NCBI GenBank assembly: GCA_001179505.1
Contig: CDMY01001036.1
Span: 155,740 to 219,739 of the forward strand
Origin: Vitrella brassicaformis CCMP3155
Lineage: Eukaryota; Protista; Chromerida
Direction of reading: 5' to 3'
Length of the DNA stretch: 64,000 bases
Part shown: one piece after another, positions 39,349 to 64,000 of the stretch
How positions within the stretch are numbered: position 1 is the first letter of the stretch
Layout: each line of letters begins with the position of its first letter
Position numbers and translations under genes: made by a program
The notes under the pieces: generated by a model
Told to the model about the DNA's origin: nothing
Seen by the model: the letters and a program-made list of their open reading frames with translations, nothing else
Database searches by the model: none

Positions 39349-41903
39349 ATGAGTGAGCCGGCACCGAAGCGGCAGAGGTTGGCGGCCGAGGGAGAGGAGG
39401 ATGATTCGAATGACGGACACCACGAGGCCGTGATGGACACCGACGGCGAACAGCAGCAGCAGCAGCAGGCCACAGCATCGCACGCGACACACAGCATAGA
39501 TCTGGAGGCCTTCGCACAGTCCTTCAGCCAAATCGTAAGCTGCAGCAAACGAAACCACTGGCAAACACACACATCCTCATTGCCTCCTCTCTCTCTGTCT
39601 GTGTGGTGTGTTGTCCACTCAGCCGGTTGTTGTTGCCTACGTCTTTTCGTTCGTGTCGCTTCATTTGGTGGCGGCGCTGCCCCAGCGGCTGTGGCGCCAC
39701 GTCGGCTGCCAGATCACCCGGCTGGTCATGGACACCTACGACACGGCCGAGCGGCGCTTCTGGTGCGGCCTCTCATTCGCCGACGCCTTCGAGTGGGGCC
39801 GGCGGCTCACACGGCTCAGGTCCATCGTGGTCAAATATCCGATAGAGCTTGCCGTCCCGAGCGATTTTGACTTCTTCACTCTGTCGCCGGTGATCGAGAA
39901 GATCGTCACGGCATTGGTGGAGGGCCACAGCGACGGGCGGAGAGGCGCAGCGGCCACAGCAACCGGGCTGCAGGGGCCAACCACATTGGAGTCCATCGAC
40001 ATAAGCAAGGGCGAATCGACCATCATCGTCGACGAGGCCGAGGGCCGCCATATCCTAGCTGCGACAGAGCCGTCGGCGGCCTTCCCCCCGCCCCTCAACC
40101 CGCCCCTCAACCCGCCCCCCACCCTCACATCCCTNNNNNNNNNNNNNNNNNNNNNNNNNNNNNNNNNNNNNNNNNNNNNNNNNNNNNNNNNNNNNNNNNN
40201 NNNNNNNNNNNNNNNNNNNNNNNNNNNNNNNNNNNNNNNNNNNNNNNNNNNNNNNNNNNNNNNNNNNNNNNNNNNNNNNNNNNNNNNNNNNNNNNNNNNN
40301 NNNNNNNNNNNNNNNNNNNNNNNNNNNNNNNNNNNNNNNNNNNNNNNNNNNNNNNNNNNNNNNNNNNNNNNNNNNNNNNNNNNNNNNNNNNNNNNNNNNN
40401 NNNNNNNNNNNNNNNNNNNNNNNNNNNNNNNNNNCCCTCACATCCCTCACGTCCATTATGATCCCGGGATATGAGCTCTCCTATCCCGGCCGCGGGCGCC
40501 AGTGGCAGCTGCCGTCAATCGAGACAGTCCAGGTGCGGAAGACGGTGTATCCGGAGATCGTGGGGGAGCTGGTGGCCACGTCACGGCGCCTCAAGGAGCT
40601 GCAGGTGGAGTGCCATCCTGACGCCATGGCGGACTCGCTGCGGCGCATCCCCACGGCCACGGCCGGCCAGCCGGGGCCGCTGTCACAGCTCGAGGACATC
40701 GGGACGCTCAACGTGAGAAATGGCGCAGTGCGTCTGGAGGGCCTTCAGGTATGCGACGAACCACATAAGCTACACAAAATCAGACAGGGAAGGCGAGAGT
40801 CTGTTTGTAATGTGCGTGTGTCTGTGTGCAGGCTGTCCTCGTCGACCGTGGCTGCCGCTCCATCAAGAAGCTCAGCATCAAGCTCGAGGACTACTCCATC
40901 AACAGCAGCATCTTCGCGACCCTCGCGGCCATCGAGGCCTTTACACTTGCCGTCTGTGTGAGGCCCGATATCCCCGTCGACATCAAGACCGGGGCCTCCT
41001 TCTTCGACCTGTCCCTCCTCTGCGACACTCCCATCCGCCCCGCGCCCTCATTCTTCGTGCAGAGGCACATCCAGCAGATGGCCGCCAAAGCCCTTGATGG
41101 CTTCGCCATCCGCCCTCACCATCTCACCACCGCTCTCGACACGCCCAGCCCCGCTGCCATCGCCGTCGCACGATCCCTGACATTCCCCAGTGCGACGACC
41201 GTGACAGTGTCGGACCAGGACGATTGGGACCCTGCCGATGATGCCGACCAGCCCGACCCGATTGTGCTCGACAGCATGCCTCACAACGCATTCCCCGCTG
41301 TATGGCGTCTCCGGTGCTACAGCGGCAAGGGGCTCGCGAGTGGGCGCAGGCTGGTGACCAAGATGCCGGCTGTCAAACGCATTACACTGTGGAAACCGAA
41401 AGAGGGGCACGCAGTGGGGATGTTGCAGGCGGTGGGTGGGGAGAGGGAGTTGGAGCGTTTTGAGGCCGGCTATGTGACGGATGTGGGTGAGGGGGGGCTG
41501 ACGTGGGGGGACATGGCAGACCAGCTGCGGACCATCAAACGGCTGGATGTTCGTGTAGAGGGTGAGCAGCAACCAATCGCCTCCATTCGCATGCACGCCA
41601 ATTGTGTCTTGTATGTGCCCGTCTGTCTGTCTGTCTGTCTGCGTCATTGTTGCAGTGCCTGAGGATTTGGGCGATGGCGATGCCGCCGGTGAGTTCGGCA
41701 TTGCGTGCGTCAAGTCGCTGCTCAAGATCCGAGGCATCGAGGAGCTCAAGTTCGCGCTGTTGCGGCCTGGAGGGCAGAGCTTCAAGCGGTTGGTGGAGGA
41801 GCGGACGCACGGCGACACCATCGAGGGGCTGGAGGGGCGGTACAGCATCGGGTGGCGGGGATATCGGGGAGATTTCCTCACTCTCAAACCACTCGACACC
41901 TGA
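39349..41903 (+). CDS. Lineage-expanded F-box-like/degenerate-LRR family, copy A (4 exons)
   Basis: MSEPAPKRQR (NLS-like), polyQ, FSQI|PVVVAYVFSFVSLHLVAALPQRLW (F-box-like), AERRFWCGLSFADAFEWGRRL and recurring LxxLxxI/LxV units. Introns in phase. The internal gap flanks overlap. Confidence 0.75.
40135..40434. other. Assembly gap, 300 N (true length probably about zero)
   Basis: Both flanks contain ccctcacatccct, which is contiguous in copy B. Confidence 0.9.
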
Positions 41904-43345
41904 CGAAAATTCGATAGGTACGGTTTGGCTACCTGGTATGGGCGCGCTTGTCCACTGCCGGTCGTGTGTGTTTTGGGCTGTGTGTTTGCCTGTCAGGTCG
42001 GGCCATCAGTTGCTGATGCGTAGAATAGAATGAGGTGCAGAGGGAGGTGGGGGTGCCATGCTTGAGGGATGCTCTCATGCGTGGCCGCTGTGGGGTGGAC
42101 TAAGTAAGCTGCATCGCTCGTCGATGAATGCGTGCTGGTGTTGTCCATGCATGTGAGAACCGAACGTTGAGCACCAGACTAATTGCTCATATTGCCCAAA
42201 GCACTGCCGTTTTCGTCACACACACATGCCTCCGTCTACCAGTATGTCCGTCCCTACGTGTGTGTCTGTGTGCATGGGGCCACCATGCCCCCGACAGACC
42301 GACAGCCAGCAAGACAGCCAGACAGACAGCCATTCGTTGACAAGTGTAAGTCAGTCAAGTCGGTACGACAGAAAGTGTGACGGTCGTTTTGTCGCATGCA
42401 GCCACTCACAAGCACACACATCCAGCCCACCAACATGTGTTGCAATCAATCTCTCCGAGAAATGATGTGTGGGTGCGTCGAGTGGCCAACCGCCTGTAGG
42501 TAGGTCAGCCAGCCAGCCAGTTGCATGACGGAGGGCGGTAAGTGTTGTCTCTCTATCTGGCTCTGCTTTTCCTCTCTCCCTCAGCGAGGTGGGTCTGCTC
42601 ATCCCAGAGAGAATGTTGTTTGTGACGCACCTCACACAGGCTCACTGACGGACGCACACAGGGATGTGTGTGCGTGTGTGTGTGCACAGGGCTGCACGTG
42701 TGTGTGTGTGTGATCGAGCCCATCGTTTTGGTCACTTTATACACACATGCACACAGCAATTTATTGTCTATCTCAGCAAACGGATATATCATCCAGTGTA
42801 TGTATTATCAGTCCGAAGGCGGCGCACTCGACATCCGCTCTCTGGCTGCCCCTCTCTATCCGTGTCTCTCTCTGCCTACCAGAGGTACCTATCGTACCAT
42901 TCACTCATTCACGAACAGTGGCAGTCCATCGTCCGTCCGTCCGTCCGTCTGTCTGTCTGTCTGTCTGTCTGCGTGTCCGTGTGGTGCTATTCATTCATTC
43001 ATTCGTCAAGCACTCCATATTATCTACCAGAGACGAGTGTTACGTACGGTTGGTGCGAGTTGTCTCTCTGTATACCAGTATACGTGTGTGCGTAAGGCCA
43101 CCATGCCTCAGCCACACATCCAGACATCCATATACTCGACAACGCAATTGGAAGAAAGCACCGGCGAGTTGTAGGTGAGCGAGACACAGCCTGGCCGAAT
43201 GAGTATGATCCTCTGTCTGTCAGATCGTCTGCTTCATACTGAGTTGCCCACTCGTCTGCCTTTCCAAGTCGCGTGCGACCTGTCATAGGGTGCTTGTGGA
43301 TGCGTCGCAATGGGGACGTTCCATGACCCTGAGGGTAGGGGCTCA

Positions 43346-43357
43346 GGGTTCAAACCC
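43346..43357 (+). promoter_or_regulatory. Conserved upstream motif GGG(T/C)TCAAACCC (B-box/telo-box-like) of the F-box-like family
   Basis: Also at 39297-39308, 47609-47620 and (minus) 60993-61004, upstream of copies A, C and D. Confidence 0.4.
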
Positions 43358-43496
43358 AAAACCCGCAAAACCCTGTGGTTGTGAATCACACTCTGACGTC
43401 TTCCAGTTTTTCGTACCACGACAGACCCTCAGGCTGCATGCCGTTGCGCTATGAGTTAATGTATTTCACACGCCCCGTTTGGTGGATGATTGAGGG

Positions 43497-45863
43497 ATGA
43501 GTGAGTCGGCATCGAAGCGGCAGAGGCGGTCGGCGGAGAGAGAAGAGGATGACTCGAATGACGGACACCAGGAGGCCGTGATGGACACCGACGGCCAGCA
43601 GCAGCAGCAGCAGCAGCAGCCGGCGGCCACAGCATCGCACACCACACACAGCATAGACCTGGAGGCCTTCGCACAGCAATTCAGCCAAATCGTAAGATGC
43701 ACCGAAGGAAACACTGGCAAACACATCCTCACTGTCTGCTCTCTCTGTGTCTGTGTGGTGTGTGTTGTCCGCTCAGCCGGTTGTCGTCGCCAACGTCTTT
43801 TCTTTCGTGTCGCTTCATTTGGTGGCGGCGCTGCCCCAGCGGCTGTGGTGCCACGTCGGCTGCCAGATCACCCAGCTGGTCATGGACACCCACGACACGG
43901 CCGAGCGGCGCTTCTGGTGCGGCCTCTCATTCGCTGACGCCTTCGAGTGGGGCCGGCGGCTCACACGGCTCAGGTCCATTGTCGTCAAGTACCCCTGGAC
44001 CTTGACGCTCCCTGGTCGGCAGCGACACACTTATGAGTACCGCAATCTGTCGCCGGTGATCGAGAAGCTCGTCACGGCATTGGTGGAGGGGCACAGTGAG
44101 GGGCGGAGAGGCGCAGCGGCCACAGCAGCCGGGCAGCCGGCGCCAACCACCTTGGAGTCCATCGACATCAGCGAGGGATCGATCATAACCGGCGACAAGG
44201 CCGAGGGCCGCGATATCCGAGCTGCGACAGAGCCGTCGGCGGCTCTCTCCCCGCCCCTCAACCCGCCCCCCACCCTCACATCCCTCACGTCCATTATGAT
44301 CCCGGGATATGGGCCCTCCTGTCCCGGCCACGGGCGCCACTGGCAGCTGCCGTCGCTTGAGACAGTCCAGGTGGTGCGAGGGACGGTGTATCCGGAGATG
44401 TTGGGGGGGCTGGTGGCCACGTCACGGTGCCTCAAGGAGCTGCACGTGGAATGCAGTACTTACGCCATGGCGGACTCGCTGCGGCGCATCCCCACGGCCA
44501 CGGCCGGCCAGCCGGGGCCGCTGTCACAGCTGGAGGACATCGGGACCCTCAGGATGTCTAGCGCTGATAGTCTGGAGGGTCTTCAGGTATGCGACGAACG
44601 AAACAAGATTCACAAAATCAGAGAGAGTGGGCGAGAGCTTCTTTGTGATGTGCGTGTCTATGTGTAGGCCGTCCTCGTCGACCGTGGCTGCCGCTCCATC
44701 AAGAAGCTCAGCGTCAAGCTCGAGGGCTCCTACATCACAAGCAGCATCTTCGCGACCCTCTCGGCCATCGAGAGCTTCGCCCGTGCCGTCTGTGTGAGCC
44801 CCGACATCGTCGACATCAAGAGGGCAGATGACTTCGACCTGTCCCTCCTCTGCGACGTCCCCACCCGCCCGGAGCCCTCACTCTTCGTGCAGAAGCACAT
44901 CCAGCAGCTGGCAGCCGGCGCAGCCTGTGTGGCCTTCGACGTCGACCCCCAGCACTTCGCCACCCCTCTCGACACGCCCAGCCCCGCTGCCATCGTCCTC
45001 GCACAGTGCCTGACCTTCCCCAACGTGAAGGATGTGGCGGTGGTGGACCAGGACGATTGGGAGCCTGACGATGACGGCGAACTCGACGTTTACGCCGGCG
45101 ACGAGCTCGACGATGACGCCGGACAGCCCGACCCACTTGTGCTGGACAGCATACCCGACAATGCATTCCCGGACGCATCAGGTCTCCGGTGCCACAGCCG
45201 CAAGGGGCTCGCGATTGGCCGCAGGCTGCTGACCAAGATGCCGGCGGTCAAACGCATTACACTGGGGAGGTCGACAGAGGAGCAAGCGGTGGGGATGCTG
45301 CAGGCGGTGGGTGGGGAGAGGGACCTCGAGTGTTTTGAGGCCACAAGCGTGACTGGCGTGGGTGAGGGGGGACTGACGTGGGGCGACATGGCCGACCAGC
45401 TGCCGACCATCAAACGGCTGGATCTTCGTGTAGAAGGTGAGCTGCCACCTATCGCCTCCATTCACATGCACGCCCATTGTGTCTTGTATGTGCCCGTCTG
45501 TCTGCCCATTGGATGTCATGTCTGCCTTCCTGTCTGTGTGCAGTGCCTGAGGATTTGGGCGATGGCGATGCCGCTGGCGAGTTCGGCATTGCCTGCGTCA
45601 AGTCGCTGCTCAAGATCCGCGGCATCGAGGAGCTCAAGTTCGCGGTGCGGCCAGCCGATACCTTCAAGCGGCTGGTGGAGGAACGAACCAATGGCGACAC
45701 CATCGAGGGGCTGGAGGGGCGGTTCGACATCGAGTGGGGCTGGACGGATGTACATGATGAGCGGAGTGATGGCGATGCCATTGAGGGGCTGGAGGCCCGG
45801 TATGGCATCCGCTGGGAGGGAGATGAGGAAGATGCGCTCACTCTTAAACCACTCGGCACCTGA
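43497..45863 (+). CDS. F-box-like/degenerate-LRR family, copy B (intact, duplicated C-terminal module)
   Basis: Same 4-exon structure, all joins in frame. The last exon has ER..GD.IEGLE.R..I.W twice. Confidence 0.8.
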
Positions 45864-46855
45864 CGACAATTCTACAGGTACGGTTTGGCTGTCTTGTATA
45901 CGCGCGCGTGTCCACTGCCGGTGGTGTCTGTTGGGCTGTATGTTTGCCTGTCAGGTCGGCCCATGTCAGCTGATGCGTAGAATAGAATGAGGTGCAGAGG
46001 GAGGGATGTGGGGGTGCCATGATGGCGGGATGCTCTCATGCGTGGCCGCTGTGGGGTGGACTAAGTAAGCTGCATCGCTCGTCGATGAATGCGTGCTGGT
46101 GTTGTCCATGCATGTGAGAACCGAACGTTGAGCTGCTTGCTGATCGAACTGATTGCTCATATTGCCCAAAGCACTGCCGTTTTCGTCACACACACACATG
46201 CCTCCGTCTACCAGTATGTCCGTCCCTACGTGTGTGTCTGTGTGCATGGGGCCACCATGCCCCGTCAGACCGACAGCCAGCCAGACAGACAGACAGCCAT
46301 TCGTTGACAAGTGTAAGTCTGTCCAGTCGGTACGACAGAAAGTGTGACGGTCGTTTTGTCGCAGGCAGCCACTCACAAGCACACACATCCAGCCCACCAA
46401 CATGTGTTGCAATCAATCTCTCCGAGAAATGATGTGTGGGTGCGTCGAGTGGCCAACCGCCTGTAGGTAGGTCAGCCAGCCAGTTGCACGACGGAGGGCG
46501 GTGGGTGTTGTCTCTCTATCTGGCTCTGCTTTTCCTCTCTCCCTCAGCGAGGTGGGTCTGCTCATCCCAGAGAGAATGTTGTTTGTGACGCACCTCACAC
46601 AGGCTCACTGACGGACGCACACAGGGATGTGTGTGCGTGTGTGTGTGCACAGGGCTGCACGTGTGTGTGTGTGTGATCGAGCCCATCGTTTTGGTCACTT
46701 TATACACACATGCACACAGCAATTAATTGTCTATCTCAGCAAACGGATATATCATCCAGTGTATGTATTATCAGTCCGAAGGCGGCGCACTCGACATCCG
46801 CTCTCTGGCTGCCCCTCTCTATCCGTGTCTCTCTCTGCCTACCAGAGGTACCTAT

Positions 46856-47155
46856 NNNNNNNNNNNNNNNNNNNNNNNNNNNNNNNNNNNNNNNNNNNNN
46901 NNNNNNNNNNNNNNNNNNNNNNNNNNNNNNNNNNNNNNNNNNNNNNNNNNNNNNNNNNNNNNNNNNNNNNNNNNNNNNNNNNNNNNNNNNNNNNNNNNNN
47001 NNNNNNNNNNNNNNNNNNNNNNNNNNNNNNNNNNNNNNNNNNNNNNNNNNNNNNNNNNNNNNNNNNNNNNNNNNNNNNNNNNNNNNNNNNNNNNNNNNNN
47101 NNNNNNNNNNNNNNNNNNNNNNNNNNNNNNNNNNNNNNNNNNNNNNNNNNNNNNN
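46856..47155. other. Assembly gap, 300 N (true length about 30 bp by comparison with the A-B spacer)
   Basis: Flanks ..ggtacctat and agtccatcg are about 30 nt apart at 42887-42925. Confidence 0.9.
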
Positions 47156-47191
47156 AGTCCATCGTCCGTCTGTCTGTCCGTCTGTCTGTCC

Positions 47192-47223
<32 letters not shown>

Positions 47224-47770
47224 GCGTGTCCGTGTGGTGCCATTCATTAATTCATTCATTCGGTCAAGCACTCCATATTACCTACCAGCACCACGGGGAC
47301 AGAGACGGACACAGAGACGAGTGTTACGTACGGTTGGTGCGAGTTGTCTCTCTGTATACCAGTATACGTGTGTGCGTAAGGCCACCATGCCTCAGCCACA
47401 CATGCAGACATCCAGATACTCGACAACGCAATTGGAAGAAAGCACCGGCGAGTTGTAGGTGCGAGCGAGACACAGCCTGGCCGAATGAGTATGATCCTCT
47501 GTCTGTCAGATCGTCTGCTTCATACTGAGTTGTCAACTCGTCTGCCTTTCCGAGTCGCATACGTGGATGCGTCGCAATGCGGACGTTCCACGGCAGGGTA
47601 GGGGCTCAGGGTTCAAACCCAAAACCCACAAAACCCTTGGTTGTGAATCACACTCTGGGTTTAGACGTCTTCGAGTTTTTCATGCCACGACAGACAAGAC
47701 CCTCAGGCTTCCTGCCGTTGCGCTATGAGTTAATGTATTTCACACGCCCCGTTTGGTGGAGAATTGAGCG

Positions 47771-50010
47771 ATGAGTGAGTCGGCATCGAAGCGGCAGAGG
47801 CAGACGGCGGAGGGAGAGGAGGATGACTCGAATGACAGAGACCACGAGGCCGTGATGGACACCGACGGCCAGCAGCAGCAGCAGCAGCAGCAGCAGGCCA
47901 CGGCATCGCACGCCACACACACCATAGATTTGGAGGCCTTTGCTCATCGCTTCAGCCAAATCGTAAGATGCACCGAAGGAAACACAGGCAGACATCCTCA
48001 TTGTCTCCTCTCTCTGTGTCTGTGTGGTGTGTGTTGTCCACTCAGCCTGTCGTCGTCGGCTACGTCTTCTCGTTCGTATCGCTTCACTTGGTGGCGGCGC
48101 TGCCCCAGCGGCTGTGGCGCCACGTCGGCTGCCAGATCACCCAGCTGGTCATGGACACCTACGACACGGCCGAGCGGCGCTTCTGGTGCGGCCTCTCATT
48201 CAGTGACGCCTTCGAGTGGGGCCGGCGGCTCACACGGCTCAGGTCCATCGTCGCCAAGTACCCGAAGAACCTCAACATCCTAAGAGAAACCCGAAGTGGG
48301 CACGTTTATCATCACGTTCACTCTCTGTCGCCGGTGATCGGGAAGTTCGTCACGGCATTGGTGGAGGGCCACAGTGAGGGGCGGAGAGGCGCATTGGCCA
48401 CAGCAACCGGGCAGCAGGCGCCAACCACCTTGGAGTCCATCGACATAAGCGAGGGATCGATCATATCCGCCGACGAGGCCGAGGGCCGCGAGATCAAAGC
48501 GGCCGACCAGCGGTTGGTGGCTCTCTCCCCGCCCCTCGACCCGCCCCCGGCCCTCACATCCATCAGCTCCATTATCATCCCGGGATATGGGCCTTCCTGT
48601 CCCGGCCGCGGGCGCCAGTGGCAGCTGTCGTCGCTTGAGACAGTCCAGGTGCGGGGGACGGTGTATCCGGAGATGTTGGGGGGGCTGGTGGCCACGTCGC
48701 GACGCCTCAAGGAGCTGCACGTGGAATGCACTCTTAACACCATGGCAGGGTCGCTGGCGCAGATCCCTGTGGCAGCCGCGGGCCAGCCGGGCCCCCTGTC
48801 ACAGCTGGAGGACATCGGAACCCTCAGTGTGAGCACGAGCGCTGAGGGTCTGGAGCCCCTTCAGGTATGCGACGAACGAAACAAGATTCACAAAATCAGA
48901 GAGAGTTGGCGAGAGCTTGCTTGTGAATTGCGTGTGTCTTTGTGCAGGCTGTCCTTGTCGATCGTGGCTGCCGCTCCATCAAGAAGCTCAGCGTCAAGAT
49001 CGAGGAAACCCACATCGACAGCGGCATCTTCGCGACCCTCGTGGCCATCGAGGCCTTCGCCCGTGCCGTGTGTGTACGGCGTGACATCCCCGTCGACATC
49101 AAGACTGGGGCAATATATTGGACCAGGGCCTGCTTCTTTGACCTGTCGCTCCTCTGTGACACTCCCACGAGCCCCGCCTCCTCATTCTTCGTGCAAAGGC
49201 ACATCCAGCAGCTGGCCGCCGCATTAGAGGCAGCCCTCTTCACCATCCGCCCCCACCATCTCACCACCCCTCTCGACACGCCCAGCCCCGCTGCCATCGC
49301 CCTCGCACAATGCCTGACATTCCCCAACGTGAAGGATGTGGGAATGGAGACATCACACAACTGGGAGCCTGACGATGATGCCGACCAGCCCGACCCACTT
49401 GTGCTCGACAGCATACCCGACAATGCATTCCCGGCCGCATCGCGTCTCCGGTGCCACAGCCGTAAGGGGCTCGCGATTGGCCGCAGGCTGCTGACCAAGA
49501 TGCCGGCGGCCAAACGCATTGACCTGCGGAACCCGACAGAGGAGCAAGCGGTGGGGATGCTGCAGGCGGTGGGCGGGGGGAAGTCGTTGGGGTATTTCAA
49601 TGCCGATTGGGTGACGGATGTGGGCGAGGGGGGGCTGACGTGGGGCGACATGGCGGACCAGCTGCCGACCATCACACGGCTGTTTATTACCATAGAAGGT
49701 GAGCAGCAACCAATCGGCAGCTCTCGCACGCCAGCCCATTGGACGTTATGTATGCCTTCTTGTGTGTGCAGTGCCTGAGGATGTGGGTGACGGCGATGCC
49801 GCCGGTGAGTTCGGCATTGCGTGCGTCAAGTCGCTGCTCAAGATCCGCGGCATCAAGGAGCTTCTGTTCGAGCTGCGGCGAGGTGGAGGGCAGCACTTCA
49901 GGCGGCTGGTGGAGGAACGGACACATGGCGATACCATTGAAGGGCTGGAGGGGCGGTACGACATCGGCTGGGGGGGATATATGCTCATTCTCCAACAACT
50001 GGACACCTGA
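47771..50010 (+). CDS. F-box-like/degenerate-LRR family, copy C (intact)
   Basis: ORFs 47771, 47968, 48942 and 49699 splice in the same 4-exon pattern. Confidence 0.8.
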
Positions 50011-50929
50011 CTCATCCGTGGCTGCTGTGGGGGAGACTAACTTAAGCTGCATGTTTCATGAGTGTCTGCGTGCTGGACTTGTAAAGACACACACGAGAAT
50101 CAAAGAGTGGTTGAACCTTCGTCTACCAGTATGTCCGTCCCTACGTGTGTGTCCGTGTGCACGGGGCCACCATGCCCCCGACAGACAGACAGACAGACAG
50201 GCAGGCAGCCACCCACACACACATCCAGCCCACCAACATGTGTGGCAATCTCTCCGAGAAATGATGTGTCCGTGCGTGGAGTGGCCAACCGCCTGTAGAT
50301 AGGTCAGCCAGCCAGCCAGTTGCACGACAACAAACTAGCCCAGACAGACAGACATCTATACGAGAAAACCGGATCGATCGCTGTTGGTACGTTGATACAA
50401 GGAAATGGGGCAAGGTCACTGGTTGATGTGATGGATCGACACACGGCCTATACGCAGGACAGTCGGCAACTCGGCAACGCACACAGGCAGGCAAGCAGGA
50501 AATACTCAGTCTTGCGCCACACACATACACCCACACATACACCCACACACACACACGCAGGGGAAGAAGAGATGTCCACATCAGCCACCACACGGAATTC
50601 CGGTCAGTGCGTCGCACTCACTGCATTCATTGCCTCATGTCCCATCCCACAAACCAAAGCCCCTCGCCCAACAAGCCGAGGAAACCAATCGCCAATGCAC
50701 ACAGACGACCGGACGGGACGACTGCCAACAGAAAAAGAGAGACAACACAGCCAAACGAGCTGACAGACACGCGAAGGAACGAACACCCAATAACTACAAA
50801 ACGGCCTTGCTTCGCTTCAACCCACCCCCACCACGTGTATGTGTGTCGGACAACACGTGTGTGGTCCTCCTCCCTTGGTTGATGGGCTGTCTGTTCTGTC
50901 CAGCTGGAGTCAGCCCCTTCCTCAGTCAG

Positions 50930-56900: not shown

Positions 56901-57515
56901 CATGCCCGTGTATGTGTATGTGTATGTGTATGGGTGTGTCATGGTTGCGTACAGTGCAGCAGGCCTCTCATGTTCCTGACGGCGGCGTTTTCGAGCTGGA
57001 AGGCCCTGTCGCCCGCAGGCACCTTCCGGTACACCAAACCCAGCGCCCACACAGCCAAGATGCTGTACACTGACCATCACAGCACCGATGGACCGATGGA
57101 TGGATGCCACCACAGTCGAACAGACAGACAGACACGCACAAGGAAAAGTCTTTCATTTGTCGGCTGCATGGCTGGCTGGCTGGCTGGGCTGTCCTGCCTT
57201 ATCCTCTCATGTGTTGGTCATGAATTGTCGGTCGTACCGTTGTCGCGCACCCAGGCATCGGTGTAGTTGCCGTGTGTGGTAATGGCAGTCGACGCGGGCA
57301 GGAGCCCTGCATAGATAGAATGACATGACAGGCAGGCACACGCAAGACAATCAGAGGGGACGTTCGGTTCTCGCCATGCATGCCTCTCTGTGTGTGCGTG
57401 TGTGTGGCCGTCAAGTCCCCTCACCTGTGTGGTGGTTTTGCTTCTGCAGGATGAGCCTGTCCACCAGCTGGTAGTGCTTGTCCAGCCTCTGAAGTATCTC
57501 TTCACGGCTCTGCAT
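50930..57515 (-). CDS. Phosphorylase kinase regulatory alpha/beta-like protein (GH15-fold)
   Basis: [24 protein letters not shown]|[47 protein letters not shown]|[108 protein letters not shown]. Confidence 0.92.
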
Positions 57516-57706
57516 GCCGGCAACGCGATGAAACACTCAGGGCCTCCTCTGAAAGAACCCGATGGAAAAGGCAAAGGCAGGGAGGGAAGGGAAAGCTCCG
57601 CAGCTAAGCTCGCAGACCTCCTCAAAAGCGAAACAGCCACGAAAGCAACGCATTGCCGGGAGGCAGGCCTGAAGGTGCTGCGAAGCATTGGACTGATTTG
57701 TGGGCA

Positions 57707-58448
57707 ATGGAGAGCAACGCATCTATCACGGCCTCGTCGCTGCTGGAGCCGCCGCAGCGGCCTGGGGAGACCACTGACAGGCACGTCATCCGGCGCAACA
57801 TCCAGGGCCTGCTGCGGGCCATCCAGCACGAGTATGTGGCGCCCTCCATCTACGTCGCCACTGGAGCTGTGCTCACTGCATGGGGCGCCCGGTGCCTTTT
57901 GCGGATGAATCGGTTCCTCTCTATGCGGTATGCGGACATCCCCTACCAGATCAGGCGGCCCGACAGCCTGGCGAACCGTGTGGCCGCCTTCAAGTGTCTG
58001 GTGCTGGGGGGATCTGTCGTGCCCATCTTCACCCTTGGCTTCGTCTATGTCATGAGGTATACACACACACGGACTGGGACAGCAGACACACAGTCGGAGC
58101 TTGCAAAGGAATGTTGGTCTCTCTCTCTCTCCATGTGTGTGTGTTAGAGTGCGTCCAGGTCCCGATGAGGCCGTGTTGATGCAGCCCGACTGGCAGTACC
58201 AGCTGTCCCGCGCAGGCAAGGTGGCCAAGTATAATGTGGGCGAGTGGCTCAAGCGGCTGGGCCTCACCACAGAGAGTGAGAACATGCGGTCGTGGGTGGC
58301 GATGGCCAAGAAGATGACCATGCACGAGTATTACCGCACCATGGGGCTCGACAAGGAGCTGCTGGCTCAGGCGAGGGAGAGGGACAAGAAGCGACTGGAG
58401 GGGATGGGCCAGCCCATGATTGAGAGCGGGGAAGACCTTGTCCGATAG
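57707..58448 (+). CDS. Hypothetical 2-TM membrane protein (2 exons)
   Basis: Hydrophobic IYVATGAVLTAWGA and LVLGGSVVPIFTLGFVYVM. Intron joins in phase, AG|A GTG CGT CCA. Confidence 0.65.
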
Positions 58449-58822
58449 CCAGACAGATTGTGAGACAGCCAGAATCACGGCATAAGTGGTGTGTGGACGC
58501 ATGTGTCGGTGATATGTTGAGGGGCTGATATGTCGGAAGCTCAAACGTCGTTCGGTCCTCATGCGTGTCGGTACAACTCCAACACGCACTCATTCATCCA
58601 CGAGCGATGCAGCTTACTTAGTCCACCCCACAGCGGCCACACATGAGAGCATCCCTCCAGCATGGCACCCCCACATCTCTCCCTCTGCACCTCATTCTAT
58701 TCTACACATCAGCTAATGATGGGCCGACCTGACAGGCAAACGTACAGCCCAAAACACACCGCCGGCAGTGGACAAGCACGCCCATACCAGGTAGCCAAAC
58801 CGTACGCACCTGTCGTCTTTCT

Positions 58823-60945
58823 CTAGGTGTTAAGCCGTTTGAGAGTGAGGAATCGTCCCAGATATCCCCTCCAGCTGATGTCATACCGCCCCTCCAGCCC
58901 CTCGATGGTGTCGCGATGCGTCCGCTCCTCCACCAGCCGCTTGAAGGCATCGTGGGGCACCGGCTGAAACTTGAGCTCCTTGACGCCTCGGATCTTGAGC
59001 AGCGACTTGACGCACACAATGCCGAACTCGCCGGCGGCATCGCCATCACCCAAATCCTCAGGCACTGCCGACAAGGACACATAAAGGGGGACAGCAGGGA
59101 GAGTCGATTGAGGCGATTGCTTGCAGCTCACCCTCTACACGAAGGTCCAGTACTGTGACGGTCGGCAGCTGATCCACGATGTCGCCCCACGTCAGCCCCC
59201 CCTCACCCACACCCGTCACCGGCCAGGCCTCGAAACACTCCAACTCCCTCTCCCCACCCACCGCCTGCAGCATCCCCACTGCGTGCCCCTCTTTCGACTT
59301 CCACAGTGCAATGCGTTTGACCACCGGCATCTTAGTCACCAGCCTGCGCCCACTCGCGAGCCCCTTGCCGCTGTAGCACCGGAGACGCCATACAGCGGGG
59401 AATGCGTTGTGAGGCATGCTGTCGAGCACAATCGGGTCGGGCTGCTCGTCGTCATCGTCAGGGTCCCAATCGTCCTGGTCCGACACTGTCACGGTCGTCG
59501 CACTGGGGAATGTCAGGGATCGTGCGAGGGCCATGGCAGCGGGGCTGGGCGCGTCGAGAGCGGTGGTGAGATGGTGAGGGCGAAGGACACTGTGTGGGCT
59601 TTGGCGGCCATCTGCTGGATGTGCCTCTGCACGAAGAATGAGGGCGCGGGGCGGATGGGGGTGTCGCAGAGGAGCGACAGGTCGAAGAAGGAGGCCCCGG
59701 TCTTGATGTCGACGATGTCGGAGCTCACACAGACGGCAAGTGTGAAGGCCTCGATGGCCGCGAGTGTCGCGAAGATGCTGCTGTTGATGGAGTAGTCCTC
59801 GAGCTCGACGCTGAGCTTCTTGATGGAGCGGCACCCACGGTCGACGAGGACGGCCTGCACACAGACACACGCAACTCACAAGGAAGCTCTCGCCCTCTCT
59901 CTCTGATTTTGTGTATCTTGTGTGGTTCGTCGCATACCTGAAGGCCCTCTAGATCCTCAGCGCTCGCGCTCACGCTGAGGGTCCCGATGTCCTCCAGCTG
60001 CGCCAGCGGCCCCGGCTGGCCCGGAGCTGCCGCCGGGATGCGCACCAGCGACCCAGCCATGGTGTCAGGGTGGCATTCCACGTGCAGCTCCTTGAGGCGC
60101 CGCGACGTGGCCACCAGCCCCCCCAACACCTCACAGTCATACACCCTCCACAGCCTCCCCTCCACCTGCACCCTCTCGAGCGACGGCAGCTGCCAGTGGC
60201 GCCCGCGGCCGGGGTAGGAGAGCTCATCTTCTGGGATGATAATGGACGTGAGGGATGTGAGGGTCAGGGGCGGGTCGAGGGGAGCCGTCGACGGCTCTCT
60301 CGCAGCTCGGATATCGCGGCCCTCGGCCTCGTCGACGATGATGGTCGACTCGCACTCGCTTATGTCGATGGACTCGAGTGTGCTCCGCCCCTGCCGCCCC
60401 ACTGCTGTGGCCGCTGCGGCTCTCCGCCCGTCGCTGTGGCCCTCCACCAATGCCGTGACGATCTTGTCGATCACCGGCGACAGAGTGCGGTGGTTATACG
60501 CGTATGGCCGCCGACCAGGAGTTTCACTTAGGATCCGAAGGCTCTTCGGGTACTTAGAGACGATGGACTTGAGCTGTTTGAGCCGCCGGCCCCACTCGAA
60601 GGCGTCAGCGAATGACAGGCCGCACCAGAAGCGCCGCTCGGCCGTGTGGTGGGTGTCCATGACCAGCTGGGTGATCTGGCAGCCGACGTGGCGCCACAGC
60701 CGCTGGGGCAGCGCCGCCACCAAATGAAGCGACACGAACGAGAAGACGTAGGCAACGACAACAGGCTGAGTGGACAACACACACCACACAGACACAGAGA
60801 GAGCAGACAATGAGGATGTGTGTGTCTGCCAGTGGATTCGTTTGCTGCATCTTACGACTTGGCTGAATTGCTGTGCGAAGGCCTCCAGATCTATGCTGTG
60901 TGTGGCCTGCTGCTGCTGCTGCTGCTGCTGGCCGTCGGTGTCCAT
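58823..60945 (-). pseudogene. F-box-like/LRR family, copy D (lost N-terminal NLS segment; frameshift in exon 3)
   Basis: 14 nt instead of 18 nt between AAAGCC and CGCCCTCAC at about 59583-59596 shifts the frame. The MSE..KRQR start is replaced by unrelated sequence. Confidence 0.7.
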
Positions 60946-61830
60946 CACGGCCTCCTCGTCTCTGCGGGCGGTGGTGATAACGCGGAATTCTAGGGTTTGA
61001 GCCCTAACCCTCAGGCTGTTGAATCGAAAGGGGAAATGGTGGGCGTGGTGGGCGGCGCCGCTGGAAGACACGCCAGGCGGGCGCTGAGGATGGTGCTGGC
61101 ATGTTTGTCGCATGATTGAGGGTTGGCCGATGTTGACGCAGTTCATTTCATGAGAGACCGACTGACTCGGCCTGCCGTTGCGCTATGAGTTAACGTATGT
61201 CACACACACTTTCATCCCCAAAGCCATGCCTAGCAGGCCGGCAGGCAGGCAGGCCCCTGTCTTTCCTCTCCTCCCTCCCTCTCGTCATATGAGGCATCAT
61301 CACCGGATTTGGTGCACACGTGGCCATGACAGAATGAATCGGCCAGCCAACACGCAAGAATGCAACACTAGCTATCACCCAGCAGTGAGAAAGTGTATAT
61401 CACGCAGCCAACTAAAGATCGTGAAATGAATGAATGGATGGATGGATGGATGGAGACAACACACCAACGTGACAGACACACACGTATGACAAACCGTGAC
61501 CCCCCTCAGCCCACAGCGCCTCTAGCCGCTGACGGGCAGTGTCTCTCAAGCGAAAAGCAGCGACCGGCACATGCTGCCAGCGGCCACAATGAAACAAAAC
61601 CTATGAGCTACAAGTCAGCAGCGGCCCGTCACCTCCCACCTCCACCTCCCTGGCCGTTGCTCTGTTGGCACGGCGTGAGCCCCCCCCCACCCACCGCCAT
61701 GTAGGTGGGCCGACGCACACAAGGCGGGCGACCCGACAGACATACATGGAACCAACATGACACACATCGCTAACACTGTGGGAGTCCACCCATACAGCAT
61801 ACCAAACTGCACCTCCTCTGTGGTCTTCTG

Positions 61831-63720
61831 TTAGGTGTCCAGGGGTTTCAGGATGAGCATGTTCTCCTGAAATCCCCGCAGTGCTTGGAGAGTGAGGAAA
61901 TTTCTCCAAAATCCCCTCCACTCGGTGAGAAACCACCCCTCCGGCTTTTCAATGGCGTCGCCATCAGTCCGCTCATCCACCAGCCGCCTGAAGGCTTCGT
62001 TGGGGATCAGCTGGAACTTGAGCTCCTTGATGCCGCGGATCTTGAGCAGCGACTTGACGCACACAATGCCGAACTCACCGGCGGCATCGCCAACACCCAA
62101 ATCATGAGGGACTGCACATAGACAGACAGACAGACGGGCACATCCAGGACACAATGGGCTGCCATCTGAATGGAGGCGATTGGTTGCTGCTCACCTTTCA
62201 CACTAACATCCAGCCGTTCGATGGTCGGCAGCTGATCCGCCATGTCCCCCAACGTCAGCCCCCCCTCGCCCACACCAGTCACCTTCCTGGCCTCGAAATA
62301 CTCCAATGACCTATCCCCGCCCACCGCCTGCAGCATCCCCACTGCTTGCTCCTCGGTTGGGTGCATCCACAGTTCAATGCGTTTGACCGCTGGCATCTTG
62401 GTCACCAGCCTGCGGCCAATCGCGAGACCCTTGCTGTGGACGGACAGCGACGATATGGCCGGGAATGCATTATCGGGTATGCTGTCCAGCACAAGTGGGT
62501 CGGGCTGGTCGGCGTCATCGTCGAGCTCGTCGCCGGCGTAAACGTCGAGCTCGCCGTCATCGTCAGGCTCCCAATCATCCCACATGTCCACCACCCCCAC
62601 ATCCTTCACGTTGGGGAATGTCAGGGACTGCGCGAGGGCGATGGCAGCGGGGCTGGGCGTGTCGAGAGGGGTGGTGAGGTGGTGGGGGCGGATGAGGAAG
62701 CGCGCTCCGGAGGCTTCGACCGCCAGCTGCTGTATGTGCCTCTGGACGAAGGGGGAGGGCTCCGGGCTCGTGGGAGTGTCGCAGAGGAGGGACAGGTCGA
62801 AGTGCCCGTCGATCTCGATGTCGACAGGAATGTCGGGGCTCACACACACGGTGCGGCTGAAGGCCTCGATGGCCGACAGGTGAGCGAAGATGCTGCTGTC
62901 GGTCCAGTATTCCTCGAATGTGACCTTGAGCTTCTTGATGGAGCGGCAGCCACGGTCGACGAGGACGGCCTACACATAGACACACGCACATCACAAGAAA
63001 GCTCTCACCCTCCCTCTCTGATCTTATGGAGTTCATCGCTCACCTGAAGGCGGTGAAAACCCTCCCTCAAATCCTTGTCCAAAAGGTCCCCCCGCGAAAT
63101 CTGGAATGTGCCGACATCCTCGAGCTGCGACAGTGGGCCCGACTGGCCGGCCGCTGCCACTGGGATCTGCGCCAGCGACTTGGCCATGACGTCAGGGTGG
63201 CATTTCACGTGCAGCTCCTTGAGGCGCCGTAACGTGCCCACCAGCTCCCCCAACACCTCATCCTTCCACACGATCTCTCGCACCTCGACAGTCTCGAGTG
63301 ACCTGGAAACCTGGACAGTCTCGAGTGACGGCAGCTGCCAGTGGCGCCCGTGGCCGGGGCAGGAGAGCTCATATCCCGCGGGGATGCCTGTGATGGATCT
63401 GAGGGATGTGAGGGTGGGGGGCGGGTCGAGGCGCGGGGGGAGACTCGGATCCGTCGACTGCTCCGTCGCAGCTAGGATAACGCGCCCCTCGGCCTCGTCG
63501 ATGATGATGGGCGATTCGCCGTCGCTTATGTCGATGGACTCCAAGGTGGTTGGCGCCTGCCGCCCCGCTGCTGTGGCCGCTGCGGCTCTCCGCCCGTCGC
63601 TGTGGCCCTCCACCAATGCCGTGATGATCTTCTTAATCACCAGCCGCGACAGAGGCATGTAGTCATAAGTGCGCCCTGGGATGCCTCTCGGGATGTATAG
63701 GCCAGGGGGAGACTTGAAGA
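61831..63720 (-). pseudogene. F-box-like/LRR family, copy E (5'-truncated: no exon 1 or F-box-like part)
   Basis: Homology starts at FKSP (about VKYP in the other copies) and downstream exons are in frame. Upstream 63720-64000 is unrelated. Confidence 0.6.
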
Positions 63721-64000
63721 GGTGGGGGGGGGAAACTGTCATTAACCGTAACACTCGTCTGTCTGTCCGCGATACTCATACAAATACAGTCCCATCAGCA
63801 CGCAGAGTCAAACAGGCTCAAGGGGAGGAGGGATCAATCCCCGCCCCATCAGCACACCCCAGTCCCGCAAACCCTCCCCTCCCTCCCCCACGCAGACAGA
63901 AGCTAGTCGCACGCGCGAGGGCGATAGACAAGCGAGAGCGAATCCATCCAGACACATGACTGAATCCCCGACCCTTCCACCCCTCCTTCTCCAACAGCGC

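What the first reader, a model, noticed from the sequence alone, without database searches (positions are those of the whole stretch)
40830..63000. Coding cassettes are mosaic while spacers stay near-identical: gene-conversion diversification
The A-B and B-C spacers are almost identical over hundreds of nt, yet the A and B coding exons differ extensively, and nearest relatives switch along the gene. A and inverted D share about 110 identical nt in exon 3 (DSMPHNAFPAVWRLRCYSGKGLASGRRL). B and E share the WEPDDDGELDVYAGDELDDDA insert (1 mismatch in 60 nt). A and B share AMADSLRRIPTATAGQPGPLSQ, B and C share GTVYPEMLGGLVATSR, and C and E share SLAQIPVAAAGQ. This resembles segmental conversion in VSG/var/NLR arrays.
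Basis: partly seen in the sequence, partly recalled or inferred. Interest (0 to 1): 0.75.

Follow-up and report, generated by a model that had tools for sequence, protein, structure and literature searches.

The report
Mosaic LRR gene cluster in Vitrella
Five neighbouring copies of an uncharacterised leucine-rich-repeat gene family of the alga Vitrella brassicaformis are real patchworks of one another and of copies elsewhere in the genome. This is the ordinary signature of gene conversion and unequal crossing-over in a fast-diversifying receptor-like family, here seen in a relative of the malaria parasites.

Summary
The window is a scaffold end of Vitrella brassicaformis CCMP3155. It carries three tandem copies (A, B, C) and two inverted copies (D, E) of a four-exon gene from an orphan family with at least 150 members.

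- **Spacers versus genes.** The A-B and B-C spacers are 96-100% identical over about 1.1 kb. The genes are 68-95% identical, and silent sites are also far more diverged than the spacers.
- **Switching relatives.** Nearest relatives change along the gene, including to copies on other scaffolds.
- **Tests.** PHI gives p below 5e-4, also on silent sites alone. Site patterns are clustered (p=1e-4). Segment trees conflict with 90-100% support. AU tests reject five clades seen in other segments. A 42-nt insert is shared only by B and E among 26 copies.
- **Gaps.** The flagged gap lies in a spacer, with about 30 nt missing. A second gap inside copy A has flanks that overlap by 13 nt.
- **Protein.** Predicted structure shows an LRR solenoid, closest to F-box-LRR receptors. 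Amino-acid variation concentrates on the β-strands.

Best reading: a recent tandem duplication of a spacer-plus-gene unit, followed by many short ectopic conversions, as in NLR clusters. Nothing indicates programmed VSG-like switching. The short-read assembly may exaggerate spacer identity. The scan has noted conversion patches in other Vitrella families.

The parts
39349..41903 (+). Copy A. Four exons: 39349-39534, 39623-40748 (holds the N gap), 40832-41561, 41656-41903. Annotated protein P0012 (604 aa) skips the gap region.
40135..40434 (.). Assembly gap inside exon 2 of copy A. The flanks overlap by 13 nt, so probably no sequence is missing. A's 5' and 3' halves are linked only by scaffolding.
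41904..43496 (+). Spacer S1 between A and B. It comprises a ~170-260 nt 3' flank shared with other family members, then sequence found only here and in S2, and B's upstream region.
43497..45863 (+). Copy B. Exons 43497-43691, 43777-44586, 44668-45436, 45544-45863. The intact 697-codon model equals annotated protein P0002.
45864..47770 (+). Spacer S2 between B and C. It is 96-100% identical to S1 over ~1.1 kb and 93-95% in the upstream region of the next gene.
46856..47155 (.). The flagged assembly gap, in spacer S2 next to a (GTCY)n microsatellite. About 30 nt are missing by collinearity with S1. It is non-coding.
47771..50010 (+). Copy C. Exons 47771-47962, 48046-48864, 48948-49698, 49772-50010. 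Equals annotated protein P0001 (666 aa).
58823..60985 (-). Copy D, inverted. It has a frameshift in exon 3 near 59590 and lacks the family's usual start. Annotated protein P0003 avoids both with an extra intron and a different N-terminus. Probably a pseudogene.
61831..63671 (-). Copy E, inverted. Homology to the family starts ~530 nt into the gene, so the conserved N-terminal motif is missing (annotated protein P0018, 584 aa). It lies 329 nt from the scaffold end, and no telomere repeat is present.
40813..41455 (+). A side of the A-D exchange tract (D side 59238-59873). Identity is 95-96%, including 110 exact nt. A+D form a clade at 100/100 support in this segment only.
45055..45172 (+). B side of the B-E tract (E side 62459-62576). 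Identity is 96.6%. It contains the 42-nt insert found only in B and E among 26 copies.
49655..49775 (+). Patch of C that is 93-95% identical to a copy on another scaffold (L021 = C309 ~5.6 kb). The next best copy is 76-85% identical. C+L021 has 94/99 support here.
59000..59180 (-). Patch of D whose nearest relative is a copy on scaffold C138 (L007, 82-89%). Identity to A falls to 69-77% here. D+L007 has 90/97 support.
43804..43979 (+). Zone at the start of exon 2 that is near-identical across the family. In the other copies it lies at A 39606-39828, C 48017-48254 and D 60579-60825. Identity is 96-98.7% between almost all copies, including those on other scaffolds. It encodes the motif PVVVAYVFSFVSLHLVAALPQRLW.

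Best explanation
This is a cluster of an orphan, Vitrella-restricted family of about 670-aa proteins. Each has a disordered N-terminus, a conserved helical motif that may be F-box-like, and an LRR solenoid. The cluster evolves by non-allelic homologous recombination.

Shown:
1. The copies are DNA-level mosaics.
2. The partners include copies on other scaffolds.
3. The signal is present at silent sites.
4. The spacer sequence exists only in this array.

Inferred history:
- The base relationship is ((A,D),(B,C)).
- A unit made of 'spacer + gene' was recently duplicated in tandem, probably by unequal crossing-over near the 3' ends of neighbouring genes. This gave S1+B and S2+C.
- Short tracts of roughly 60-650 nt were then copied between family members, including the defective copies D and E.
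- These tracts overwrote parts of the gene bodies. The spacers have no homologous donor elsewhere and kept their post-duplication identity.

Selection appears to favour variety on the LRR β-strand face and to keep the N-terminal motif constant. New combinations of binding-surface segments therefore persist, as in plant NLR and receptor-like-protein clusters.
For: **Organism and assembly.** Vitrella brassicaformis CCMP3155; the assembly is 72.7 Mb in 1064 scaffolds (PMC4501334).

**Identity profiles.** Nearest neighbours switch along the gene.

**Recombination tests.**
- PHI is significant on A-E: 0.401 against 0.490 +/- 0.009.
- PHI on silent sites only gives p=2e-4.
- PHI on 18 family copies gives z=-11.9.
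- Quartet site patterns are clustered, with AD|BC the majority at 80 of 141 sites.

**Segment trees.**
- D+L014 100/99
- (A,(B,C)) 95/97
- A+B 92 and C+D 92
- A+D 100/100
- D+L007 90/97 and C+L021 94/99
- C+L011 96

**AU tests on exon 3.** These reject D+L014, D+L007, C+D, A+B and C+L021.

**Shared indel.** The 42-nt insert is unique to B and E.

**Spacers.**
- The spacer is not a dispersed repeat. Only local copies exist, apart from a ~170-nt 3' flank.
- No Rfam family or tRNA lies in it.
- Spacer identity is 96-100%, against dS of 0.14-0.33 and intron distances of 0.09-0.41 among A, B and C.

**Assembly check.** Exact matches of 74 nt or more, which a k=75 assembler needs to switch paths, are absent at most breakpoints.

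**Fold.**
- The exon-3 domain model has pLDDT 90.7 with alternating strands and helices.
- All top 50 VIA matches are LRR proteins.
- The full-length model's best Foldseek matches are TIR1, COI1 and D3/MAX2, at E 2e-6 to 7e-5.

**Variability.** β-strand residues have pN/pS 0.91 against 0.58 elsewhere, p=1.3e-5.
Against: - The assembly is short-read only (velvet k=75, IMAGE gap filling, ICORN). No independent assembly or read data could be consulted.
- The 100% identical 300 nt next to a gap may be a collapsed repeat.
- In the short segments the A+D clade is not formally rejected (p 0.11-0.28).
- The AU clades were chosen after seeing the trees.
- The best gene-body tracts between B and C (91-95%) are still less similar than the spacers. 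A single duplication plus a few large tracts is therefore not the whole story.
- dN/dS is below 1 for every structural class, so positive selection is not demonstrated.
- Direction, timing and reciprocity of the exchanges are not resolved.
Confidence: 0.7

Rival explanations
1. Assembly artefact. The mosaics and the near-identical spacers were created by the short-read assembler, through path switching between paralogues, bubble collapse and gap filling with reads from the wrong copy. They do not exist in the genome.
For: - The genome was assembled with velvet k=75, SSPACE, IMAGE and ICORN (PMC4501334).
- Two scaffolding gaps lie in the array.
- Copy A's halves are joined only by scaffolding, and the contig ends overlap.
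- A 300-nt stretch at 100% identity between the spacers abuts a gap.
- Exact repeats of 74 nt or more exist in the conserved exon-2 zone, in the A-D tract and in the spacers.
Against: - Most switch points have no shared exact stretch of 74 nt or more, which a k=75 graph needs in order to jump.
- The shared tracts are 93-98% identical, not 100%, so they are distinct sequences.
- The same kind of mosaic involves copies on many other scaffolds.
- Reading frames of A, B and C stay intact across the junctions.
- Most of the signals lie within single contigs (40435-46855 and 47156-64000).
Confidence: 0.1
2. No exchange at all. Uneven constraint and mutation rate along the gene, plus convergent selection on the protein, make different copies look closest in different windows.
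For: - Conservation does vary strongly along the gene: mean pairwise identity ranges from 50% to 92% per 60-nt window.
- dN/dS differs between structural classes.
Against: - Rate variation cannot change which copy is nearest.
- PHI is significant on third positions and introns alone.
- Introns follow the same block structure.
- A 42-nt indel is shared only by B and E.
- AU tests reject alternative clades.
Confidence: 0.03
3. The spacers are near-identical because they are functionally constrained, for example as a shared promoter, regulatory RNA or hidden gene. Recent duplication is not the reason, and gene divergence is simply the neutral rate.
For: - The spacer includes the upstream regions of B and C.
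- The first ~170-260 nt after the stop codon are conserved in several family members.
Against: - The 1.1-kb core is absent from all other family loci.
- It is rich in microsatellites.
- It has no Rfam or tRNA match.
- Selection rarely holds more than 1 kb of non-coding DNA at 96-100% while neighbouring silent sites differ by 14-33%.
Confidence: 0.05
4. Programmed or somatic cassette switching, as in VSG or var. Defective copies D and E would serve as a donor archive, and conversion would occur during clonal growth to vary an expressed copy.
For: - Defective copies take part in exchanges.
- The array lies at a scaffold end.
- A constant 5' module is joined to variable LRR segments.
Against: - There is no telomere repeat at the scaffold end.
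- Tracts are 2-7% diverged, so they are old rather than ongoing.
- The organism is a free-living, coral-associated alga with no known need for antigenic variation.
- No data exist on expression or on clonal lines.
Confidence: 0.03

Closest known systems
Plant NLR and receptor-like-protein resistance gene clusters (e.g. the RPP8 family, PMC6771003; reviewed in PMC3645687)
   Same: - Tandem and dispersed LRR paralogues.
- Sequence exchange between paralogues that produces mosaics.
- Pseudogene members.
- Amino-acid variability concentrated on LRR β-strand residues.
- Birth-and-death turnover.
   Different: - No NB-ARC, TIR or kinase domain; no Pfam domain at all.
- The organism is a chromerid alga.
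- No link to immunity is known.
- dN/dS on the β-face is about 0.9, not clearly above 1.
F-box-LRR substrate receptors of SCF ubiquitin ligases (TIR1, COI1, D3/MAX2, FBXL)
   Same: - Best structural matches of the full-length model.
- Architecture of a short N-terminal helical motif followed by a long LRR solenoid.
- The motif VFSFVSLHLVAALPQRLW resembles the F-box consensus (my reading of the sequence).
- F-box families are known to expand in a lineage-specific way.
   Different: - No F-box or LRR Pfam hit, even at E up to 10.
- No PDB sequence hit.
- The N-terminal helices are modelled at low confidence (pLDDT 47-63).
- TM-scores are low (~0.2).
- Skp1 binding is untested.
Antigenic-variation archives (trypanosome VSG, Plasmodium var)
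   Same: Segmental conversion between many paralogues, including defective ones, yielding mosaic genes.
   Different: - Those systems act somatically, with single-copy expression sites at telomeres.
- None of this is shown here.
- The tracts here are evolutionary relics.
Tandem gene arrays homogenised by concerted evolution (e.g. Trypanosoma brucei arrays, PMC1855330)
   Same: - Tandem duplicates with non-coding flanks and some coding segments kept near-identical by recombination.
- The 5' zone shared across the family behaves in this way.
   Different: Most of the coding sequence here is diversified rather than homogenised.

Membership tests
Leucine-rich-repeat (LRR) solenoid proteins | Repeated β-strand/helix units that form a curved solenoid | tested here: met
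   - The AF2 model of the exon-3 domain has pLDDT 90.7 and pTM 0.87, with 9 strand-helix units.
- All 50 best VIA-align matches are LRR proteins, though Z is only 5.0-6.5.
- The full-length model is a continuous β/α solenoid from residue ~95 to the end.
Leucine-rich-repeat (LRR) solenoid proteins | Recognisable LRR sequence motif (a match to a Pfam LRR model) | tested here: not met
   - No Pfam family for five exon translations at E up to 1.
- No LRR family among 14 full-length members at E up to 10.
- The repeats are irregular.
F-box proteins (SCF substrate receptors) | F-box motif of ~45 aa, detectable by sequence profile | tested here: not met
   - No PF00646, PF12937 or related hit.
- A profile search of PDB sequences found no F-box protein.
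F-box proteins (SCF substrate receptors) | Three-helix F-box fold placed N-terminal of the LRR domain | tested here: inconclusive
   - Short helices at residues 54-92 precede the solenoid, but pLDDT there is 47-63.
- The top 14 Foldseek matches are F-box-LRR receptors, but the output does not show whether the F-box itself is aligned.
F-box proteins (SCF substrate receptors) | Binding to Skp1 | not testable with these tools
   Needs a binding experiment.
Multigene clusters evolving by gene conversion or unequal crossing-over (NLR-type) | Clustered paralogues whose phylogeny is incongruent along the gene | tested here: met
   Segment trees conflict at 90-100% support. AU tests reject five alternative clades in exon 3.
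Multigene clusters evolving by gene conversion or unequal crossing-over (NLR-type) | A statistically significant recombination signal that does not depend on protein selection | tested here: met
   - PHI p below 5e-4 on all sites.
- PHI p=2e-4 on silent sites.
- z=-11.9 for 18 copies.
- Site-pattern clustering p=1e-4.
Multigene clusters evolving by gene conversion or unequal crossing-over (NLR-type) | Hypervariable solvent-exposed β-strand residues with dN/dS above 1 | tested here: inconclusive
   - Strand residues are significantly more variable: pN 0.36 against 0.18-0.22, p=1.3e-5.
- Class-level pN/pS is 0.91, not above 1.
- No recombination-aware site model was run.
Programmed antigenic-variation systems (VSG/var type) | Telomeric expression site, single-copy expression, and somatic conversion between clonal lines | not testable with these tools
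   - Only one indirect point could be checked: there is no telomere repeat at the scaffold end.
- Expression data and clonal-line data are not available here.

The most novel reading that the evidence does not exclude
Vitrella maintains a germline recognition repertoire of at least 150 orphan F-box-like LRR genes. A constant adaptor module at the 5' end is kept uniform by concerted evolution. The LRR binding-face segments are continually reshuffled by ectopic conversion, with defective copies serving as donors. This would be an immune-type or partner-recognition system, arisen independently in the sister lineage of Apicomplexa, and possibly still active during clonal growth.
Probability: 0.1. 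Interest if true: 0.75.

Novelty: new member of a known kind. Interest (0 to 1): 0.45.

Why it matters
Mosaic evolution of clustered LRR genes is textbook in plants and animals. I found no paper describing it for nuclear gene families of chromerids, the closest photosynthetic relatives of apicomplexan parasites.

Three features together suggest a ligand-recognition repertoire under diversifying pressure in a coral-associated alga:
- a large orphan family;
- an F-box-LRR-like fold with a hypervariable β-face;
- a constant N-terminal module.

Such a repertoire could bear on how alveolates sense partners, prey, viruses or bacteria.

There are also practical consequences:
- The locus shows where the reference annotation is misled by gaps and frameshifts (copies A and D).
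- Family trees for this family must be built segment by segment.

Tried and rejected
- **Spacer as a transposable element or dispersed repeat.** Rejected: only local copies exist.
- **Known RNA or tRNA in the spacer.** None found.
- **'TAG stops' in exon 3 of B and E.** These are the TAG acceptor of intron 2, not premature stops.
- **GENECONV-like longest exact runs.**
  - Significant for several pairs.
  - Too strict for old tracts.
  - Distorted in the five-copy run by E's non-homologous 5' end.
  - I rely on PHI, site patterns and trees instead.
- **Pfam, PDB-sequence and Atlas searches.** No family assignment. The Atlas gave only weak LRR/FNIP leads.
- **Foldseek on the exon-3 domain alone.** Weak, with E at or above 0.02.
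- **Pfam on long distant relatives.** Only occasional TLDc or MORN fusions; no F-box.
- **ORFs between C and D (50.3-58.7 kb).** No Pfam domain. The 367-aa ORF is not a family member.
- **Independent assemblies.** The protein search returned no hit from a read-based assembly source. The chimeric-assembly rival could therefore not be tested directly.
- **Earlier scan notes by sequence.** Nothing found.
- **Joined spliced model.**
  - Searches were made exon by exon, by reference.
  - Full-length work used the database's own proteins (P0001 and others).
  - Exons were joined only inside a local script, to check the reading frame.

Full report
**What the locus is**

The window is the last 64 kb of scaffold C1036 of a 72.7-Mb, 1064-scaffold genome. 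The proteins it encodes are deposited as unnamed products of Vitrella brassicaformis CCMP3155. Size and scaffold number match the published assembly (PMC4501334).

The region holds five copies of one gene:
- three tandem copies on the + strand: A (39349-41903), B (43497-45863) and C (47771-50010);
- two copies on the - strand: D (58823-60985) and E (61831-63671).

The gene has four exons with GT-AG introns of about 65-110 nt. My model for B is 697 codons and equals the annotated protein P0002. C equals P0001, which is 666 aa.

**The gaps**

The window has four 300-N runs, and two of them lie in the array.

The flagged gap (46856-47155) is in the B-C spacer.
- Its left flank ends at the equivalent of 42887 in the A-B spacer, and its right flank resumes at the equivalent of 42918.
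- About 30 nt are therefore missing, next to a (GTCY)n microsatellite.
- No reading frame is involved.

The second gap (40135-40434) was not flagged. It lies inside exon 2 of copy A.
- The same 13 nt end the left flank and start the right flank, and B has that stretch once.
- The two contigs abut or overlap, and the frame runs on.
- A's two halves are linked only by scaffolding, and the annotated A protein (P0012, 604 aa) wrongly splices around the gap.

**Check of the observation**

Every quoted sharing is real.
- A-D: a 110-nt exact match within a 640-nt tract at 95-96% identity.
- B-E: a 42-nt insert within 118 nt at 96.6% identity. The insert is absent from the other 24 aligned copies.
- A-B: a 70-nt exact match.
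- The B-C and C-E peptides are as quoted.

The spacers are 96% identical over 881 nt. In 100-nt windows they are 96-100% identical from 42060 to about 43200, and 93-95% identical through the upstream region of B and C.

The genes are much more diverged.
- They are 68-95% identical in windows.
- Among A, B and C, dS is 0.14-0.33 and intron distances are 0.09-0.41.

The gene DNA, not only the protein, is therefore much more diverged than the spacer DNA.

**Is it a mosaic?**

Sliding-window comparison with 21 further family copies fetched from the same genome shows that each copy's nearest relative changes every 100-700 nt. The nearest relative is often a copy on another scaffold (C309, C633, C138).

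Recombination tests:
- PHI on A-E is 0.401 against 0.490 +/- 0.009 in permutations, with 0 of 2000 permutations as low.
- On third codon positions plus introns alone, p=2e-4. With E's non-homologous part excluded, p=2e-4 to 8e-4.
- For 18 family copies, z=-11.9.
- In the quartet A, B, C, D, the pattern AD|BC dominates (80 of 141 sites). The AB|CD and AC|BD sites are clustered: 57 label changes against 81.6 +/- 5, p=1e-4.

Maximum-likelihood trees of six consecutive segments give strongly supported but conflicting partners:
- D with L014 (100/99);
- (A,(B,C)) (95/97);
- A+B and C+D (92 each);
- A+D (100/100);
- D+L007 (90/97), C+L021 (94/99) and E+L005 (93);
- C+L011 (96) and A+L010 (93).

AU tests:
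- On the 690-nt exon-3 segment, D+L014, D+L007, C+D, A+B and C+L021 are rejected (p from 6e-6 to 0.014).
- In the shorter segments, C+D or B+C are rejected.
- A+D is not formally rejected there (p 0.11-0.28). Power is low, and the clades were named after the trees were seen.

**Could the assembler have made it?**

The assembly used velvet with k=75, followed by scaffolding, IMAGE gap filling and ICORN correction. A path switch between paralogues needs a shared exact stretch of at least 74 nt. Among the 26 copies, such stretches exist in only three places:
- the conserved start of exon 2;
- one place in the A-D tract;
- the spacers.

Most junctions lack them. The shared tracts differ by 2-7%, so they are distinct sequences. 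Frames of A, B and C stay open.

I therefore think the mosaic is real. The 100% identity over 300 nt of spacer beside a gap could be a collapsed repeat, so the degree of spacer identity is less certain.

**Why the spacers stay alike**

- The spacer is not a mobile element. Apart from the first ~170 nt after the stop codon, which other family members share, its sequence occurs only in S1, in S2 and as a 230-nt remnant after C.
- It holds no known RNA.
- The majority site pattern pairs B with C and A with D.

The simplest history is a recent tandem duplication of a unit 'spacer + gene', giving S1+B and S2+C, with breakpoints near the 3' ends of the genes. Many short conversions from other family members followed.
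- Gene bodies have 25 or more potential donors, so they have been overwritten in patches.
- The spacer has no donor elsewhere, so it kept its identity.

This history is inference. Even the best B-C gene tracts (91-95%) are less alike than the spacers, so either many very short tracts or assembly collapse of the spacers contributes as well.

**What the protein is**

The family has no name.
- No Pfam family matched exon translations or 14 full-length members.
- No PDB sequence matched a family profile.
- A profile search of 1.84 billion representative proteins found only 147 relatives.
- The word search found only Vitrella proteins, plus one metagenomic protein at 41% identity.
- Within the genome, exon 3 alone has more than 150 matches: about 30 at 50-72% identity and over 100 near 30%.

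Structure prediction does give a fold.
- A 32-sequence alignment of the exon-3 domain gave a confident model, with pLDDT 90.7 and alternating strands and helices.
- All 50 best matches to that model in a full PDB scan are LRR proteins, at modest Z of 5-6.5.
- The full-length model (pLDDT 77.8) has a disordered first 52 residues, a few short low-confidence helices, and then a continuous solenoid.
- Its best matches are the F-box-LRR receptors TIR1, COI1 and D3/MAX2, at E 2e-6 to 7e-5.

The LRR fold is supported. F-box membership is not established.

**Diversification**

- Pairwise dN/dS is 0.4-0.8.
- In 17 intact exon-3 sequences, β-strand residues have pN 0.36 and pN/pS 0.91. Helices and loops have pN 0.18-0.22 and pN/pS 0.58.
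- 45% of strand positions are highly variable, against 7% of helix positions (Mann-Whitney p=1.3e-5).
- This is the pattern of LRR receptors with a variable binding face, but it falls short of proof of positive selection.

The first ~200 nt of exon 2 behave in the opposite way.
- They are 96-98.7% identical between nearly all copies, even those otherwise ~73% identical.
- dS there is 0.18, against 0.43-0.44 elsewhere.
- This suggests homogenisation of a constant module.

**State of the copies**

- A, B and C are intact.
- D has a frameshift in exon 3 near 59590 and lacks the usual start. The annotation hides this with an extra intron and a new N-terminus.
- E lacks the conserved N-terminal part.
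- Both defective copies nevertheless share recent tracts with intact ones.

**Comparison and verdict**

The locus works like plant NLR or receptor-like-protein clusters: tandem and dispersed LRR paralogues, exchange between paralogues, pseudogene members and a variable β-face. It is not a member of those families, since it has no NB-ARC, TIR or kinase domain.

Nothing supports VSG/var-type programmed switching. There is no telomere repeat at the scaffold end, and the tracts are old.

No paper on gene conversion in Vitrella nuclear families was found. Other agents of this scan have noted conversion patches in other Vitrella gene families, so the process seems general in this genome.

The finding is real. 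It is a new example of a well-known evolutionary mechanism, in an orphan family that deserves a functional look.

Noticed in passing
A 39606-39828, B 43804-43979, C 48017-48254, D 60579-60825: A stretch of about 200 nt at the start of exon 2 is 96-98.7% identical between almost all family copies, including copies on other scaffolds that are otherwise ~73% identical. Exact runs reach 121 nt. dS is 0.18 there against 0.43 in the rest of the gene. This suggests either concerted evolution of a constant N-terminal module or selection on the nucleotide sequence.
   Followed up: partly
window 59132-59854 (-), near 59590: Copy D has a frameshift in exon 3. The reference annotation (P0003) bridges it with an extra intron that removes ~15 conserved residues, and gives D a different N-terminus. 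D is probably a pseudogene annotated as a gene.
   Followed up: partly
window 40135-40434: The annotated protein of copy A (P0012, 604 aa) splices around the N gap and loses ~60 residues. The gap flanks overlap by 13 nt, so the true gene is probably uninterrupted.
   Followed up: yes
window 45740-45817 (B) and ~61850-61890 (E): B has a 78-nt in-frame insertion in exon 4, a diverged tandem copy of the preceding ERT.GD.IEGLE..Y.I.W motif. E has a 39-nt insertion just before the stop codon.
   Followed up: no
window 57218-58321 (-): A 367-aa ORF with no Pfam domain lies downstream of D. Its only other copy is a decayed one on scaffold C836 (13034-13660). That copy sits directly after a stretch matching the family's 3' flank (C836:12635-12810), so gene and neighbour were once duplicated together.
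   Followed up: partly
G000:C1036 at about 46.8 kb, 97-98 kb, 103 kb and 110 kb (outside the window); also clusters on C309 and C13: Further family copies lie upstream on the same scaffold, and in clusters of three to seven on scaffolds C309 and C13. Some have stops or frameshifts.
   Followed up: no
P0019 (JGI metagenome contig, 3302 nt): The only non-Vitrella relative in the word search is a 654-aa metagenomic protein at 41% identity. It has the same N-terminal motif but a different C-terminal third.
   Followed up: no
window 42923-43012 and 47156-47265: (GTCC/GTCT)n and (CATT)n microsatellites lie in both spacers. The S2 assembly gap abuts them.
   Followed up: no
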